Source of the DNA: Blastocladiella emersonii ATCC 22665
Lineage: Eukaryota > Fungi > Blastocladiomycota
NCBI GenBank assembly: GCA_025594325.1
Contig: JANHCV010000011.1
Span: 186,001 to 250,000 of the forward strand
Length of the DNA stretch: 64,000 bases
Direction of reading: 5' to 3'
Shown: piece after piece, positions 37,660 to 43,357 of the stretch
Layout of the letters: every line of letters begins with the position of its first letter
Numbering within the stretch: the stretch's first letter is position 1
Notes under the pieces: model-generated
Databases searched by the model: none
What the model saw: only the letters and a program-made list of their open reading frames with translations
What the model was told of the DNA's origin: nothing
Made by a program: the position numbers and the translations under genes

Positions 37660-40600
37660 ATGAAGACTTCCCCCGCTGCCGCTGCACCCGAGCGCCCGCC
37701 GCCGGTCCCGCGCCTCGACGTGGCGGCGTACGCCAAGCAGCTGCTCGGTGCGACGTCGTACGCGGAGCGCGAGGCGCTGCGGCTCAAGCACGTCGGCCAC
37801 GAGAACGCGCTGCGCCAGCTGTTCGCGCAGCACCGCGACTCGGCGCCCGAGCTCGCCGACCCGCACGTCCTGCTCGTCCCGCTGCACGAGCTGCCGCCCG
37901 CCGCGCGCTGCGTGCCCACGGTGTTCGCCGACGAGCGCAAGCTGCCGTCCGTGTTCCCCAACAAGGACAAGCTCGGCGAGGGCAAGATCGCCATTGCCGA
38001 CCGCTCCGAGTTCGCCCTCAACTGGAAGCTGTACACGGCCGGCGCCCTCGACTGCCTCGACTGGAACAACCTGTTTGCCGCCGGCGGCGCCGTCCAGGCC
38101 TGCCTGTCGCACCTCGACCCCAAGCTCACGTACGGCGAGCGCCGCGACCACTTCCTCGACAAGTTCCCGTCGAGCGACGTCGACCTCTTCATCTACGGCC
38201 TCGACGAGGACGCCGCCAAGGAGAAGATGGAGCAGATCTACAACTCGATCATGGACGCGATTCCGTTCGAGGTCGTCGTGATTCGGTACGCTTTCTCGCT
38301 CGTTCGTGTTCCCCTCGAGGCGTCTCGCTGACCAGCACTGCCCCCGACGTAGCACCCCGCTCGCCTGCACCATCGTCTCGCAGTACCCGTACCGCCACGT
38401 CCAGATCGTGCTGCGCCTGTACAAGAGCCCCGCCGAGGTCATCATGGGCTTCGACGTGGACGCGTGCTCGGTCGGCTTCGACGGCACCCGCATCCTCGCC
38501 ACGCCGCGCGGCCACCTCGCCCTGCTCACCCAGACCAACTCGATCGACCTGACGCGCCGCTCGCTGACCTACGAGTCGCGCCTCGCCAAGTACGCGGCCC
38601 GCGGCTTCGAGGTGCGCGTGCCGTCGCTGCGCCGCGACGACGTGGACCCGCAGATCTACGAGCGCTCCTTTGACAAGGTGCGCGGCCTCGCGCGCCTGCT
38701 CCTCTTCGAGGCCATTGGGTCGCAGGAGAACCGCTTCGTCTACAAGGAGCAGCAGCGCGAGCGCAAGGGCCGCCCAGAGCACCCGAACGCCGGCCAGTTC
38801 GAGGCCCGCGCCCACCTCCGCCGCAGCGACCTCAAGGCCAAGGACGCGCTCGCCACGTCCGACTACGCCACGGTCCACCTGCCGTACGGGCCCGGCTACG
38901 ACGCGGCCCGCATCGTGCGCCAGCTCGCCAAGCGCGACCGTACGTGGAACTTCTGCTGCTTTGACCATGGCCGCCGACCACAGCCACTGACCTCCTCCAC
39001 CCACCCCTAAATTCCAGGCCAGCTCTGCAATGACTACGTGATGCGCAAGCGCGGCGTCAAGGTGCACACGCACCCGACCTTTTTCGGCACCATGCAGGAG
39101 GTGCTCGTCGACGCGTGCGGCGAGTGCCCGCCCGCGGGGCCCGAGGACGCCGCCGACCTCGAGGGGTTCGTGCACGGCCCGCTGCGCTTCATCACCGACG
39201 ACCCGGGCCGCCAGTCGATCGGCTCGTTCCACCCGATCACGGACGAGGAGTGGACCGCCGACGCGTACATCACGGCCGAGCGCGAGCCGCTCATCACGGC
39301 GGTCGCGCGCGGCGACGTCCCCGCGGCCCGCGCCATCCTCGACGCGCAGGGCGCCGACTACGACCTCGAGTCCCGCGACTGGGTCGGTCGCACCCCGCTG
39401 CACGTCGCTATCCTCTGCGCCCGTACCGCCATGGTCGAGTTCCTGATCGAGCGCGGCGCTCGCGTCTCGGCCCCGCTGCCCGACGGACGGCTCCCGATCC
39501 ACGTCGCCGCCGAGTACGGGCTCGCTGATATCGCCGAGCTCGTCTGGGCCCGCAACCTCAAGAACCGCGCCGAGCTCGAGGCTCAGGGCAAGGCTGTCGG
39601 CGACCACGACGAGGACGACGACGCCAAGAAGGAGGGCAAGGCCGGGTCCGCGTCTGGCTCGGACGAGGACGGCTCGGACCCTGACGGCTCGGACGCTGAC
39701 GGCTCGGACGCTGACGGCTCGGACGACGGTGACGATGACGATGACGACGAGGAGGAGAACAAGGACGAGTCCATGGACGAGGACGGCGAGCCCAGGCCGA
39801 AAAAGGACAAGAAGAAGAAGAAGGTCGAGCCCGCGCCCAAGGAGAAGGCTGAGGAGGAGGAGCCCGACGTGTTTGGCATCCAGACGCGTTGCTGGGACTA
39901 CGGGCTTGCGCCGATCCACTCCGCGGTGCTGTACGGCCACCTCGACCTCGTGCGCTGGCTGCTCGACCACGGCGCGTCGCCCAACCGCAAGTACAAGATG
40001 GCCGCGCGGTGGTCGCGCAACGAGAACGCGACGCTCGCGCTCGCGCACCTGACGCCCGACCCCGCCGTCGGCATGGCGATCGCCGAGCTGCTCCTCGAGC
40101 GGGGCGCCGAGGTCGACCAGGCCGTCCTCCAGGCCACCATCAACGACCAGGCCAAGGACTTCTTCGTCCGCTACGTCAAGCACTCGGACGACGCCCTCAA
40201 GCAGCTCGACGACCTCGTCCTGGCCGTCATCCGCACCAAGGACGCGGCGCTGCTGCGCGAGGTGATTGCGCTCGGCGCCACGGTCAAGTTCGACGCGGCG
40301 TGGGCGGCCAAGAAGTTCGGCATCTTGCTCGGGCAGGCCGAGGGGCGCCTCGAGATGATGAGCCTGACGGCGCCGCTCATCGAGGCCATTGGCCGCTACG
40401 ACACGCCCAACCCCGAGATTGTGCAGATCCTGCTCGAGGCCGGCGCCGACGTCAATGTGCGGCAGTACCGGTGGGGCGGGTCGGACCTCATGGACGAGGT
40501 GTGCGATATGGTCGTCGAGGCGGGCAACTCGCTCGGGTACTACCTGACCGCGCCGACGGGCGAGGAGCCCGACCGCAAGGCCAACGAGGAGCGCACGCGC

Positions 40601-43357
40601 GCCCTCAAGACGCTGGCGTTGTACGACGACTACGTGCGCGAGCGCCGGTCGCCCGTGTCGACCAAGCCCCGGTCCACGGTGCGCGTCTCGGTCGCCGACT
40701 CGGCCAAGCTGCAGAACGAGTCGCTCGTCCAGTGCCACGAGAAGCTCGTCGCCCTGCGCAAGATCTACGACATGCTCCACAAGGCCGGCGCGCGCCCGTC
40801 GTCGACGCCCAACCCGCTCCACGCCATGCCGACGGTCGAGGAGGCCCTCACGCTCGCCATCGAGCCGCTCGGCCCCGCGCTCCTCGCGCTGCCGACGCCG
40901 CAGGCGCTCGCCCTCGAGCGCGTCAAGAAGCACTCGGCGGCCGCGGCCGCGGCCGAGGCGGGCACGGACACGTCGCGCCTCGACGCCGTCAAGGCCGCGC
41001 GCGAGCTGCGCCGCGAGGCCAAGTACACGCTGCTGACGACGCGCCCCGGCAAGGCGACCGTGATCCCGGACGCCGAACACAAGGAGTACCACGCGCTGTT
41101 CGAGCTCGTGTGGAAGGGCGACGCGGCGCGCGTCGAGCAACACGCCCGCGACAAGCGCGTCCTCGTGACGTGCGCCAACGAGTGGGGCGAGTCGCCGCTC
41201 GCCATTGCCATTGTCCGCCAGCACACGGCCGTCATCGGCGCGCTCATCAAGCTCGCGCGCGAGCAGTACCAGGCCGAGGTCAAGCCCGCCGCGGGCAAGC
41301 CCAAGGTCAAGCTCCTCAACAACTACGACCTCGACTCGGACAAGGGGTCCGACGACGACTCGGGCGACTCGGACGATGGCGGCCACGGCGACGACTTGGA
41401 CGAGGCCGAGGAGAGCGACGAGGACGGCGAGGCCGAGGAGGCGCGGCGCGCGGCCAAGCACGTGCGGCTGACGCACTCGCTGACGGACGTCAAGGAGTTC
41501 CTCACGCGCAACTACGCGTTCCCGTGCATTGCCGAGGACGCGCGGTCGTACGTGCACCCGCTCGAGCACATGGTGCTGACCGGGTGGGTCGACGGGCTGC
41601 GCGCGCTGGTTGCGGCGATCCACGAGGCCGCGGCCGCGGGCGACCTCAAGTACGGGTGGGAGTCGCTCAAGCAGTCGGGCATCGAGTTTGTCGCCGGCGA
41701 CCTCGCCCAGGACCTCGTTTCGGGCCACGTCGGCGACTCGCTCACGGACGCTGCGCGGTTCACGTCGTCGGCGTCGCCCATGGTGCTCGCGCTGCAGCTC
41801 GGCGACATTAACGTGGTGCGCGCGCTCGTCCAGGAGACGCTCGGCGGGTTCCAGATGTGCATCTTCCACCACGTCGACGGCCGGCTCGCCGAGGTCAAGT
41901 CGCGCATGCAGTTCAAGTCCGAGTATGGCGGGCTCAGCGCCGCCAAGCGGTACATGGGCCGTCCCGGCGGGCACCACGGCGGGGCTCGGTTCACGCCGCG
42001 CGCGAAGAAGGTCGAGTTCGACCCCGAGATCTCGTACTGGGCCTTCTTTGCGGCGGCGGCCAAGGAGCCGCGCACGCTCGAGTACCTGGCGTCGCAGCAC
42101 GCGCGCGACGACATTGACGCGTTCGTGGCCAAGTACGCGCCGCGCGGCGACGCGCGCGCCGTCGAGCTGCAGGACGCGGCGGTCCGCGACCGGTTCAAGC
42201 AGCATGCGCTGTTGCTGACGGGCGACTCGCGCGGCGCGGGCAAGTCGACGATCCTGCACTACCTGGTCGAGGCGACGGCGACGGCGCCAATGCTCGACAC
42301 GCTCGCGGCGCTGATCCCGCGCGACCAGTACAAGGCGCTCGTCAACCAGCGCGACGCCAACGGCACCACGCCGCTGTATGCGGCCGTCGCCGTGCACCCG
42401 TCGCGCCGCGCCGTCGGCAAGCTCCTGCAGCAGGGCGCCGACCCGCTCGCCGTGTGCGGCGGCACGCGCCAGTGGACGGCGCTGCACCGCGCGTGCTACC
42501 AGACCGGCACCAAGGCCGGCGTGCTCGCTCGCCCGTTCATCAACCACTGCTCGCTCGCGACCATGGTCAAGCTGCTGTCGGCCAAGTCGTCCGTCTACGG
42601 CCACACGCCGCTCGCGCTCGCCATGCTGCACGGCAACTCGGGCATGGTGCGCGACCTCGTCGAGTACGTGCAGATGCACGCGGCAGCGATCCGCGCGATC
42701 GACGCCGACTTTTCGGTCGTCGTCGCCGACGTGGCCGCCAACTCGCCCGTCCACCACGCGGTCGTCCAGTCCAACGTCGAGGTCCTGCACACGCTCGCGC
42801 TCCTCGCGCCGCCCGCCTCGCACGCGGCGTGGACCGCCGAGAACGCGGACGGCATGACGCCCGCGGCCCACGCCATGCACCAGCTGCGCCACGCGCTCGC
42901 CGAGAACAAGTCGGCCGAGATCGCCGCGTCGATCCGCAGCCCCACCACGCGCGTCGACCGGTACCTCGATCTCGCCGACGAGACGGACGACGACGACGAC
43001 GAGGACGAGGTCGAGGGCGGCGAGGAGGCCAAGCCCACGCCCGAGCACCAAAAGCCGCACAAGCACGACGCGCTGCGCAACGACGCGGTCCAGACGTACC
43101 TCGCCATCAAGGCGCACGGGCTCCTGCGCCGCGACCGGCTCGGCGACCGCGCCCTCGCCCCGCTCACGGCGGCGCGTGGCGTCGCGCGGATGGTCGCGGG
43201 TGTCGTGCGCGACGGCAAGCTCGACGAGCACGCTAAGCTCCGCGAACACGCGGCCGAGCCGTACCGCACGACCGCGACGCCGCGGGTCGAGGTGCTGGGC
43301 GCGGTCAAGGTCGGCAAGATGTTGCGCGCCAAGAAGGCGGCGGCGAAGAAGGCGTGA
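37660..43357 (+). CDS. ~1,850-aa protein: N-terminal nucleotidyltransferase-like domain, acidic linker, many ankyrin repeats; introns 38286-38352 and 38940-39017
   Basis: Exons 626+587+4340 nt = 1851 codons. LFAAGGAV...SDVDLFIYG, GFDVDACSVGFDG, IDLTRRSLTYESRL. Ankyrin motifs GRTPLHVA, GRLPIHVAAEYG, GLAPIHSAVLYGH, GESPLAIA, GTTPLYAA, GHTPLALA, GMTPAAHA. Confidence 0.85.
39670..39726 (+). repeat. In-frame 15-nt tandem repeat GGCTCGGAC(C/G)CTGAC encoding GSD(P/A)D in the acidic linker
   Basis: Three full copies and one partial copy read directly. Confidence 0.8.

What the first reader, a model, noticed from the sequence alone, without database searches (positions are those of the whole stretch)
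37660..39270. Unannotated nucleotidyltransferase head fused to a long ankyrin array: candidate sensor-NTase
Seen: after splicing, the N-terminal ~450 aa carry hhAGGAV (GG at 38083-38088), SDVDLF (DxD at 38176-38184), GFDVDAC and IDLTRRSLT. These are followed by a His/Cys-containing block (HTHPTFFGT...DACGECP...PGRQSIGSFHPIT), an acidic linker and two clusters of ankyrin repeats. Established: G[GS]...DxD is the Pol-beta NTase signature, and DLxRRDxT is motif B of class II CCA/poly(A) enzymes, which DLTRRSLT resembles. Inference: a catalytically competent NTase regulated by a repeat scaffold, which could be an RNA-tailing, AMPylating or second-messenger enzyme (architecture analogous to cGLR/OAS-type sensors). 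From memory such fungal proteins are labelled only 'ankyrin repeat protein'; this needs verification. The GG-to-DxD spacing (~28 aa) is longer than canonical.
Basis: partly seen in the sequence, partly recalled or inferred. Interest (0 to 1): 0.7.

Follow-up and report, generated by a model that had tools for sequence, protein, structure and literature searches.

The report
Gad2-family nucleotidyltransferase fused to ankyrin repeats
This three-exon Blastocladiella gene encodes a 1,850-residue protein whose front end is a conserved, probably active nucleotide-transferring enzyme; it is related to CCA-adding/poly(A) enzymes and to the phage anti-defence protein Gad2, is fused to ankyrin repeats, and belongs to a very large, already catalogued but functionally unstudied family of eukaryotes and giant viruses.

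Summary
All the motifs are at the stated coordinates. The splice model equals the public protein H9P43_008101 of Blastocladiella emersonii (1,850 aa).

The core interpretation also holds.
- The AlphaFold models show a Pol-beta core. G142-G143 sits between strand 1 and helix 2, and D173/D175 sit on strand 2.
- G[GS], DxD, Q226, D243 and R277-R278-S279 are 97-100% conserved in 138 homologues.

The domain is not uncatalogued. Precomputed Pfam 38 labels it PF26128 'Gad2'. I confirmed the homology to the validated phage Gad2 family by profile-profile alignment (96.7%, E 4e-10).

The family is large, with 3,757 clusters at 50% identity. It spans fungi, several protist lineages and giant viruses, and often keeps the ~1,800-aa ankyrin architecture. 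No eukaryotic member has a known substrate.

Verdict: a new member of a known kind, of moderate interest.

The parts
37660..38285 (+). Exon 1 (residues 1-208 plus 2 nt of R209): N-terminal helices, strand 1, GG loop, insert helix, DxD strand, helix 3, strand 3
   Evidence: identical to P0001; models
38286..38352 (+). Intron 1 (67 nt, GTACGC...TAG, CTGAC branch site)
   Evidence: junction VVVIR|TPLAC matches P0001 and is continuous in homologues
38353..38939 (+). Exon 2 (residues 209-405): rest of the NTase head (Q226, GFD243VD, RRS, RLAKY) and the helical neck-like region
   Evidence: exon 2 alone finds 3,757 representative clusters
38940..39017 (+). Intron 2 (78 nt, GTACGT...CAG, CTGAC branch site)
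   Evidence: junction LAKRD|RQLCN matches P0001
39018..43357 (+). Exon 3 (residues 405-1850 plus stop): His/Cys module, PGRQ motif, ankyrin arrays, acidic linkers
38083..38088 (+). G142-G143, the G[GS] of Pol-beta motif A, between strand 138-141 and helix 143-148
   Evidence: secondary structure; G 99/99; G/S 100/101
38089..38175 (+). 29-residue spacer between GG and DxD. It contains a helix (158-168) with near-invariant R162, is absent from phage Gad2 (11-12-residue spacer), and falls in a gap opposite CCA enzymes
38176..38184 (+). D173-V-D175, the two metal-binding carboxylates of motif A, at the start of strand 174-179
   Evidence: 114/118, 115/120; aligned to DxD of Gad2 and of CCA1
38402..38404 (+). 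Q226, an invariant Gln on strand 225-228. It is the probable spatial replacement of the third carboxylate
   Evidence: 137/137; the equivalent Q508 is described in a pandoravirus homologue
38447..38467 (+). GFDVDAC. D243 is invariant and aligns by transitive profile alignment with the Asp of class II motif B (RRD)
   Evidence: 138/138
38543..38608 (+). IDLTRRSLTYESRLAKYAARGF: invariant R277 R278 S279 E283 R285 K288 Y289 R292. The RLAKY..RGF part aligns with LRVxKY..RGY of Gad2 and LRAVRF..LGF of CCA1, just after motif D
39065..39127 (+). H421-x-H423 ... C438-x-x-C441: four conserved ligands, a probable Zn site (inferred)
   Evidence: pLDDT 92-98 in model 2
39203..39241 (+). PGRQSIGSFHPIT: a conserved motif between the His/Cys module and the first ankyrin repeat
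39290..39544 (+). Ankyrin cluster 1 (residues 496-580). It packs directly after the enzyme module
39602..39874 (+). Acidic then Lys-rich low-complexity linker (residues ~600-690, GSD(A/P)DGSD repeats); poorly conserved
39899..39991 (+). Ankyrin repeat that opens cluster 2 (residues 699-729)
   Evidence: Pfam Ank/Ank_3
42359..42667 (+). Ankyrin cluster 3 (residues 1519-1621; ankyrin-like conservation continues to ~1700)
   Evidence: Pfam Ank_2/Ank; conservation

Best explanation
The gene encodes a single-copy 1,850-aa protein. Residues ~110-300 form a Pol-beta-superfamily nucleotidyltransferase head of the class II (CCA-adding/poly(A) polymerase) type, and belong to the Gad2 family (Pfam PF26128). 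A helical neck-like region follows, then a conserved HxH...CxxC module (probably Zn-binding), then long ankyrin arrays. Shown: the fold, the family membership, and near-invariance of the motif A residues. Inferred: the enzyme is active and uses two-metal chemistry at D173/D175 to transfer an NMP from an NTP to a hydroxyl acceptor. Q226 would stand where the third carboxylate usually is. D243 and the R277/R278/R285/K288 cluster would line the nucleotide pocket. The ankyrin scaffold would recruit or position the target or localise the enzyme. The most likely acceptor is an RNA 3' end (template-independent tailing); a protein or small-molecule acceptor is second. It is not the cell's CCA-adding enzyme, which is encoded elsewhere in this genome.
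For: Fold. Model 1 has pLDDT ~90 over residues 20-275. Model 2, built from 90 sequences, has mean pLDDT 91.2 and pTM 0.86. Both give helix 115-125, strand 138-141, GG, helix 143-148, strand 174-179 (DxD), helix 183-200 and three further strands.

Family. PF26128 is precomputed on P0001 and on nearly all listed homologues. The Atlas names it 'Gad2'. hhalign of the eukaryotic core profile against a 10-member phage Gad2 profile that includes the validated SPbetaL7 Gad2 gives Prob 96.7%, E 3.8e-10, 156 columns. Phage Gad2 against the CCA1 family gives Prob 82.6%, E 9.7e-6. The window protein hits phrog_1614 'nucleotidyltransferase' at E 6e-5, and so does Gad2. There is a weak Pfam Polbeta hit over the DxD.

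Conservation of G[GS], DxD, Q226, D243, RRS and R285/K288/Y289 is 97-100%. The N-terminal 100-500 is the best-conserved part of the whole protein. The canonical CCA1 (P0139, PF01743+PF12627) lies on another contig.
Against: There is no biochemical datum for any eukaryotic member, and the mechanism of phage Gad2 itself is still unknown. No carboxylate was found at the usual third position (Q226; T210 by alignment). Class II motifs B (RRD) and D (EDxxR) are not conserved. The GG-DxD spacer is 29 aa instead of 9-13. Direct profile comparison with the CCA family is not significant (E 0.09-0.14), so the class II link rests on structure and on the transitive Gad2 bridge. No model coordinates were available, so 3-D clustering of D173, D175, Q226 and D243 was not measured. 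No tRNA-binding body/tail domain is present, so the RNA acceptor is a guess. No transcript evidence could be obtained.
Confidence: 0.72

Rival explanations
1. Pseudoenzyme. The NTase-like head has lost catalysis and serves as a nucleotide- or RNA-binding module within a large ankyrin scaffold.
For: There is no third carboxylate at the canonical strand position (Q226 invariant). Motifs B and D of class II enzymes are absent. The GG-DxD spacer is unusually long. NF45/NF90-type inactive NTase folds appear among the weak structural hits.
Against: G[GS] and both Asp of DxD are kept in 97-100% of homologues across fungi, protists and giant viruses, which is typical of active enzymes. According to the literature cited in the preprint read, class II enzymes need only the two motif A carboxylates. 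The enzyme region is the most conserved part of the protein.
Confidence: 0.12
2. Second-messenger synthase or sensor of the cGAS/OAS/CD-NTase kind: ligand binding to the ankyrin scaffold switches on synthesis of a cyclic or linear oligonucleotide signal.
For: The family has relatives in virus-host conflict (phage Gad2) and is expanded in giant viruses. CD-NTases, DncV and a cGLR appear in the structure lists.
Confidence: 0.06
3. Protein or small-molecule nucleotidyltransferase (AMPylase-like). The ankyrin repeats bring a protein substrate to the head domain, which nucleotidylates a Ser/Thr/Tyr or a metabolite hydroxyl.
For: Ankyrin repeats are protein-protein interaction modules. No RNA-binding body/tail domain is detected. 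Antibiotic NTases (LinB, LnuA, ANT) are in the weak structural list. In the Atlas, phage relatives are fused to ADP-ribosyltransferase domains, which typically modify proteins.
Confidence: 0.1

Closest known systems
Phage Gad2 (Gabija anti-defence 2; Bacillus phage SPbetaL7, OQ921347.1 109563-110765) and Pfam PF26128 'Gad2'
   Same: The same head domain, with colinear motifs: AGG; DxD; an invariant Gln strand (LQMI against VQIV); FD (TFDFT against GFDVD); LRVxKY..RGY against RLAKY..RGF. Profile-profile Prob 96.7%, E 3.8e-10. Both hit phrog_1614 and phrog_4400. PF26128 is precomputed on the window protein.
   Different: Gad2 is a 400-aa phage protein with a canonical 11-12-residue GG-DxD spacer. 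It has no RRS motif, no HxH/CxxC module and no ankyrin repeats. Its known role, blocking the bacterial Gabija system, has no obvious counterpart in a fungus. Single-sequence comparison is not significant.
Class II tRNA nucleotidyltransferases / bacterial poly(A) polymerase (Pfam PF01743 PolyA_pol; e.g. PDB 3wfo, 3h37, 3aql, 1miv)
   Different: No PF01743 hit. A 29-aa spacer in motif A. RRD is replaced by GFD. EDxxR is not conserved. There is no body/tail tRNA-binding domain. The genome has a separate bona fide CCA1.
Pandoravirus BTB-nucleotidyltransferase 'cluster 7' (A0A2U7UAG2; preprint 10.1101/2023.12.02.569716) and other giant-virus paralogues
   Same: The same family by structure (BFVD hits to Pandoravirus, Pithovirus, Hokovirus and Fadolivirus, E 1e-9 to 7e-33). 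The same peculiarities are described: motif A kept, a conserved Gln in place of the third carboxylate, DFD at the motif B position, and two basic residues downstream. The Gln-to-FD spacing is 17 residues in both.
   Different: The viral proteins are fused to BTB, VWFA or ankyrin domains and are often multi-copy. The window gene is a cellular, intron-containing, single-copy gene. Some giant-virus MAGs do carry intron-free ORFs that exceed 1,500 aa and run off the fetched locus; they are 37-40% identical over residues 111-490 or 16-500.
TENT5/FAM46 non-canonical poly(A) polymerases
   Different: Higher rmsd (4-6 A), no sequence signal, a different helical domain, and no ankyrin or Zn module.

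Membership tests
Pol-beta superfamily nucleotidyltransferase fold | hG[GS] between the first core strand and the following helix | tested here: met
   FAAGG at 139-143; strand 138-141 and helix 143-148 in both models; G142 99/99 and G/S143 100/101
Pol-beta superfamily nucleotidyltransferase fold | [DE]h[DE]h on the second core strand, 9-13 residues after G[GS] | tested here: inconclusive
   DVDLF lies at the start of strand 174-179 and is 97% conserved. The spacing is 29 residues, not 9-13, because of an inserted helix.
Pol-beta superfamily nucleotidyltransferase fold | Third catalytic carboxylate on a neighbouring strand | tested here: not met
   The strand 225-228 carries invariant Q226. hhalign-based mapping gives T210. 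Invariant D243 is nearby in sequence, but its 3-D position could not be measured because no coordinates were available.
Pol-beta superfamily nucleotidyltransferase fold | Structural similarity to solved NTases above background | tested here: met
Pfam PF26128 (Gad2) | Match to the family HMM | tested here: met
   PF26128.2 is listed as a precomputed domain of P0001 and of nearly all homologues. The name comes from the Atlas. The local Pfam copy lacks the model, so I could not re-run it.
Pfam PF26128 (Gad2) | Demonstrable homology to the experimentally validated Gad2 | tested here: met
   hhalign of the eukaryotic core profile against the phage Gad2 profile: Prob 96.7%, E 3.8e-10, 156 columns, catalytic motifs in register
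Pfam PF26128 (Gad2) | Anti-Gabija activity | not testable with these tools
   This is a functional assay in B. subtilis. It is not expected to be the native role in a fungus.
Class II CCA-adding enzyme / poly(A) polymerase (PF01743) | PF01743 HMM match | tested here: not met
   No hit for the exons, P0001 or the homologues. The same search finds the genome's real CCA1 elsewhere.
Class II CCA-adding enzyme / poly(A) polymerase (PF01743) | Motif B RRD and motif D EDxxR | tested here: not met
   RRD aligns with GFD243. DDPLR of CCA1 aligns with non-conserved positions before R285. The RRS at 277-279 is not at the motif B position.
Class II CCA-adding enzyme / poly(A) polymerase (PF01743) | tRNA/RNA-binding body and tail domains (PF12627) | tested here: not met
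   No PF12627 hit. A His/Cys module and ankyrin repeats follow instead.
cGAS/OAS/CD-NTase (Mab21-type) signalling NTases | Specific structural or sequence similarity to the family | tested here: not met
Ankyrin repeat proteins | Ank HMM matches and ankyrin fold | tested here: met

The most novel reading that the evidence does not exclude
The eukaryotic/giant-virus branch of the Gad2 family is an ancient conflict enzyme. Like phage Gad2 against Gabija, it would act in host-virus (or host-mobile-element) antagonism. It would nucleotidylate an RNA or a protein of an immune or surveillance pathway, or make or consume a nucleotide signal, with the ankyrin array choosing the target. Giant viruses would have captured and multiplied it as a counter-defence tool.
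Probability: 0.15. Interest if true: 0.8.

Novelty: new member of a known kind. Interest (0 to 1): 0.42.

Why it matters
A catalytically plausible nucleotidyltransferase is conserved in thousands of protein clusters, and no substrate is known for it. The family occurs in all major fungal phyla. It also occurs in Fonticula, labyrinthulids, Blastocystis, diplonemids, a hemimastigote, metamonads and haptophytes. Giant viruses carry it in many copies.

Its only experimentally studied relative, phage Gad2, defeats a bacterial immune system by an unknown enzymatic mechanism. The eukaryotic members, including those in genetically tractable fungi, could therefore help reveal what chemistry this family performs, and Gad2 work could help in the other direction.

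For this window, the result turns a 'hypothetical protein' into a specific, testable enzyme annotation. It also corrects the motif assignment. The window gene itself is an ordinary member of the family, and the family is already in Pfam.

Tried and rejected
- Sequence searches of exon 1, exon 2 and the family profile against PDB sequences found nothing meaningful.
- hhalign of the family against a single CCA1 sequence, and against a CCA1 family profile, was not significant. The low-stringency alignment put GFDVD opposite the GYDLDF strand of CCA1. I dropped that mapping in favour of the significant two-step bridge via phage Gad2.
- tblastn of the domain against 50,697 phage records found no match.
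- hmmsearch and hhalign of the family against the single Gad2 sequence were not significant. Significance came only with a 10-member phage profile.
- Searching phi3T for the gad locus was a detour.
- Fold searches with the second, better model were swamped by its ankyrin repeats and say nothing about the enzyme part.
- No RNA run was listed, so read laying was not used and splicing and expression are unverified by reads.
- A Walker-A-like GAGKST at ~1465 (weak AAA_29 hit, E 0.04) reads as part of an ankyrin-like G-x-T-x-L-H repeat. I rejected it as a P-loop.
- The 1,666-aa antisense ORF at 38249-43249 is a high-GC artefact.
Full report
**1. What is in the window**

The region 37660-43357 (+ strand, ~70% GC) holds one gene of three exons: 37660-38285, 38353-38939 and 39018-43357. 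The introns are short. Intron 1 is 67 nt (GTACGC...TAG) and intron 2 is 78 nt (GTACGT...CAG). Each has a CTGAC branch site.

The spliced product equals the public protein P0001, 'hypothetical protein H9P43_008101 [Blastocladiella emersonii ATCC 22665]', 1,850 aa. This also identifies the organism.

Exon-wise references and the database protein were used throughout. The gene is single-copy in its genome. No RNA run was listed, so the introns rest on splice signals, reading frame and uninterrupted homology across both junctions.

**2. The observation**

- GG at 38083-38088 (G142-G143)
- DxD at 38176-38184 (D173, D175)
- GFDVDAC at 38447-38467
- IDLTRRSLT at 38543-38569
- HTHPTFFGT...DACGECP at 39065-39127
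- PGRQSIGSFHPIT at 39203-39241

An acidic linker and ankyrin clusters follow (Pfam Ank families at residues 496-580, 699-729 and 1519-1621). The GG-to-DxD spacer is 29 residues.

The motifs are not chance. Counts in an alignment of 138 homologues:

| Residue | Conserved |
|---|---|
| G142 | 99/99 |
| G/S143 | 100/101 |
| D173 | 114/118 |
| D175 | 115/120 |
| Q226 | 137/137 |
| R230 | 137/137 |
| D243 | 138/138 |
| D245 | 132/138 |
| N271 | 137/138 |
| R277, R278, S279 | 138/138 each |
| E283 | 137/138 |
| R285, K288, Y289, R292 | 138/138 each |
| H421 | 106/113 |
| H423 | 104/108 |
| C438 | 96/100 |
| C441 | 94/100 |

Among full-length relatives, residues ~100-500 are the best-conserved part. 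The ankyrin regions are colinear but diverge.

**3. Fold**

Two AlphaFold2 models were made.
- Model 1: residues 1-500, from 15 sequences. pLDDT is ~90 over residues 20-275.
- Model 2: residues 95-600, from 90 sequences. Mean pLDDT is 91.2 and pTM 0.86.

Both give the Pol-beta core: helix 115-125, strand 138-141, G142-G143, helix 143-148, an inserted helix 158-168, strand 174-179 that starts with D173-V-D175, helix 183-200, then strands 206-209, 213-217 and 225-228.

Structure searches with model 1:
- Foldseek against the PDB returned almost only class II CCA-adding enzymes at the top, then TENT5/FAM46, NF90/NF45, TUT7, CdnE and PAP.

**4. Family**

The local Pfam copy gives only a sub-threshold Polbeta hit over the DxD (E 0.09). 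The precomputed annotation of the protein database lists PF26128 on P0001 and on almost all homologues. The ESM Atlas labels PF26128 as 'Gad2' (Pfam 38.1), both by language-model features and by structure (TM 0.71/0.81 to an Ascomycota cluster).

Gad2 is the second anti-Gabija protein of SPbeta-like Bacillus phages. It is 400 aa, is predicted by AlphaFold to be a nucleotidyltransferase, and its mechanism is unknown. Reviews from late 2026 add no mechanism.

I fetched the real Gad2 (OQ921347.1 109563-110765) and nine phage homologues.
- A single-sequence comparison with the eukaryotic family is not significant.
- The profile-profile comparison is: Prob 96.7%, E 3.8e-10 over 156 columns. AAGG aligns with AGG, SDVDLF with NDxDiyF, VQIV with iQlI, GFDVD with sFDFt, and RLAKYAxRGF with LRVxKYxxRGY.
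- The phage Gad2 profile in turn matches the eukaryotic CCA1 family (Prob 82.6%, E 9.7e-6, 196 columns).
- Both Gad2 and the window protein hit phrog_1614 ('nucleotidyltransferase') and phrog_4400.

**5. Motif mapping**

Through the Gad2 bridge, the mapping is as follows.
- Motif A of CCA enzymes (GGxVRD...DxD) corresponds to AAGG...SDVD.
- Motif B (RRDxTINA) corresponds to sFDFT of Gad2, and so to GFD243VD of this protein.
- The LRAVRFASRLGF helix just after motif D corresponds to RLAKYAARGF (R285, K288, Y289, R292).

No carboxylate is found at the third-carboxylate position. Invariant Q226 sits on strand 225-228.

An independent preprint on pandoravirus BTB-NTases reports the same set of features: motif A conserved, Gln at the third-carboxylate site, DFD at motif B, and two conserved Arg downstream that match base-contacting residues of 6qy6. 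It also recalls that class II enzymes need only the two motif A carboxylates. The Gln-to-FD spacing is 17 residues in both proteins.

These mappings are alignments, not measured distances, because the tools return no coordinates.

**6. Distribution**

Exon 2 alone finds 3,757 representative clusters (50% identity) at E<=1e-3, and 1,564 at E<=1e-10. Most of the best hits are 1,500-2,000 aa with the domain at ~210-400, so the architecture is conserved.

Named members come from:
- Blastocladiomycota, Chytridiomycota, Zoopagomycota, Glomeromycota, Ascomycota and Basidiomycota
- Fonticula
- Blastocystis
- Hondaea (labyrinthulid)
- Lacrimia (diplonemid)
- Spironema (hemimastigote)
- Trimastix

. A BTB-fused form occurs in haptophytes. 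No animal or plant member was seen among the listed hits.

Giant viruses hold many relatives. There are 82 BFVD hits at E<=1e-3, the best being a 1,496-aa Fadolivirus ankyrin protein (E 7e-33), with fusions to ankyrin, BTB and VWFA domains. There are 18 IMG/VR loci, nearly all named giant-virus MAGs. They include AT-rich, intron-free ORFs that exceed 1,500 aa and run off the fetched locus; these are 37-40% identical over residues 111-490 or 16-500.

**7. What it is not**

The genome has a normal CCA-adding enzyme elsewhere (P0139, 683 aa, PF01743+PF12627). The window protein lacks PF01743, PF12627, RRD and EDxxR. It is therefore not a CCA enzyme or a bacterial-type PAP.

**8. Most likely mechanism**

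- Shown: Pol-beta class II-like fold; Gad2-family membership; strict conservation of the motif A residues and of a basic/acidic cluster after them; a conserved HxH...CxxC module; ankyrin arrays.
- Inferred: an active two-metal NMP transferase whose target is chosen by the His/Cys module and the ankyrin scaffold. An RNA 3' end is the most likely acceptor, by analogy with all the close structural neighbours.
- Rivals: pseudoenzyme, protein or small-molecule nucleotidylation, and signal-nucleotide synthase. They are scored in the report sections.

**9. Verdict**

It is wrong or unproven on details: the motif B assignment, the cGLR/OAS analogy, the 'sensor' role, and the claim that the domain is uncatalogued.

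The gene is an ordinary member of a large family that is catalogued but biochemically unexplored. It is a new member of a known kind, of moderate interest. The interest lies mainly at the family level, in the link between a phage anti-defence enzyme, giant-virus paralogue swarms and a widely conserved eukaryotic protein.

Noticed in passing
window 38249-43249, - strand: A 1,666-aa open frame lies antisense to the gene. It has a low-complexity Arg/Gly/Val-rich translation. At ~70% GC this is the expected stop-free shadow of a long coding region, not a gene.
   Followed up: partly
window ~39662-39800 (residues ~620-665): An imperfect in-frame repeat GSD(A/P)DGSD runs into a stretch of Asp/Glu and then a Lys-rich stretch (KKDKKKKK). 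Similar acidic linkers occur at residues ~1170-1215 and ~1745-1765. All are poorly conserved.
   Followed up: no
G000:C18:894886-895386 (L004, - strand ORF 139-2346): The canonical mitochondrial/cytosolic CCA-adding enzyme of this genome (P0139, 683 aa in NCBI). The open frame extends upstream to 735 aa from a GTG, so the annotated start or a presequence may deserve a look.
   Followed up: no
L006-L009 (IMG/VR giant-virus MAG contigs): AT-rich (33-38% GC; measured on L007) giant-virus contigs carry intron-free ORFs that exceed 1,500 aa and run off the fetched locus. They have the same NTase + His/Cys + ankyrin-like layout and are 37-40% identical over residues 111-490 or 16-500. The direction of transfer between viruses and eukaryotes is open.
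   Followed up: partly
ESM Atlas clusters (rows 2 and 9): There are other fusions of the Gad2-type head. One is BTB_2 + Gad2 in haptophytes and other eukaryotes. Another is a ~940-aa phage protein that combines Gad2 with ADP-ribosyltransferase domains (PF01129/PF03496).
   Followed up: no
P0143: A plant (Artemisia annua) CCA-enzyme fusion protein carries both PF01743 and PF26128 in the precomputed Pfam list. This shows that the two HMMs overlap on genuine CCA enzymes.
   Followed up: no
L025 and phage hits H38-H75: Gad2-like heads occur in 164 phage records (Klebsiella, Streptococcus, Salmonella, Vibrio, Aeromonas, jumbo Erwinia/Serratia phages). Most records share only the N-terminal ~196 residues with Gad2, so the C-terminal half of Gad2 is variable.
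   Followed up: partly
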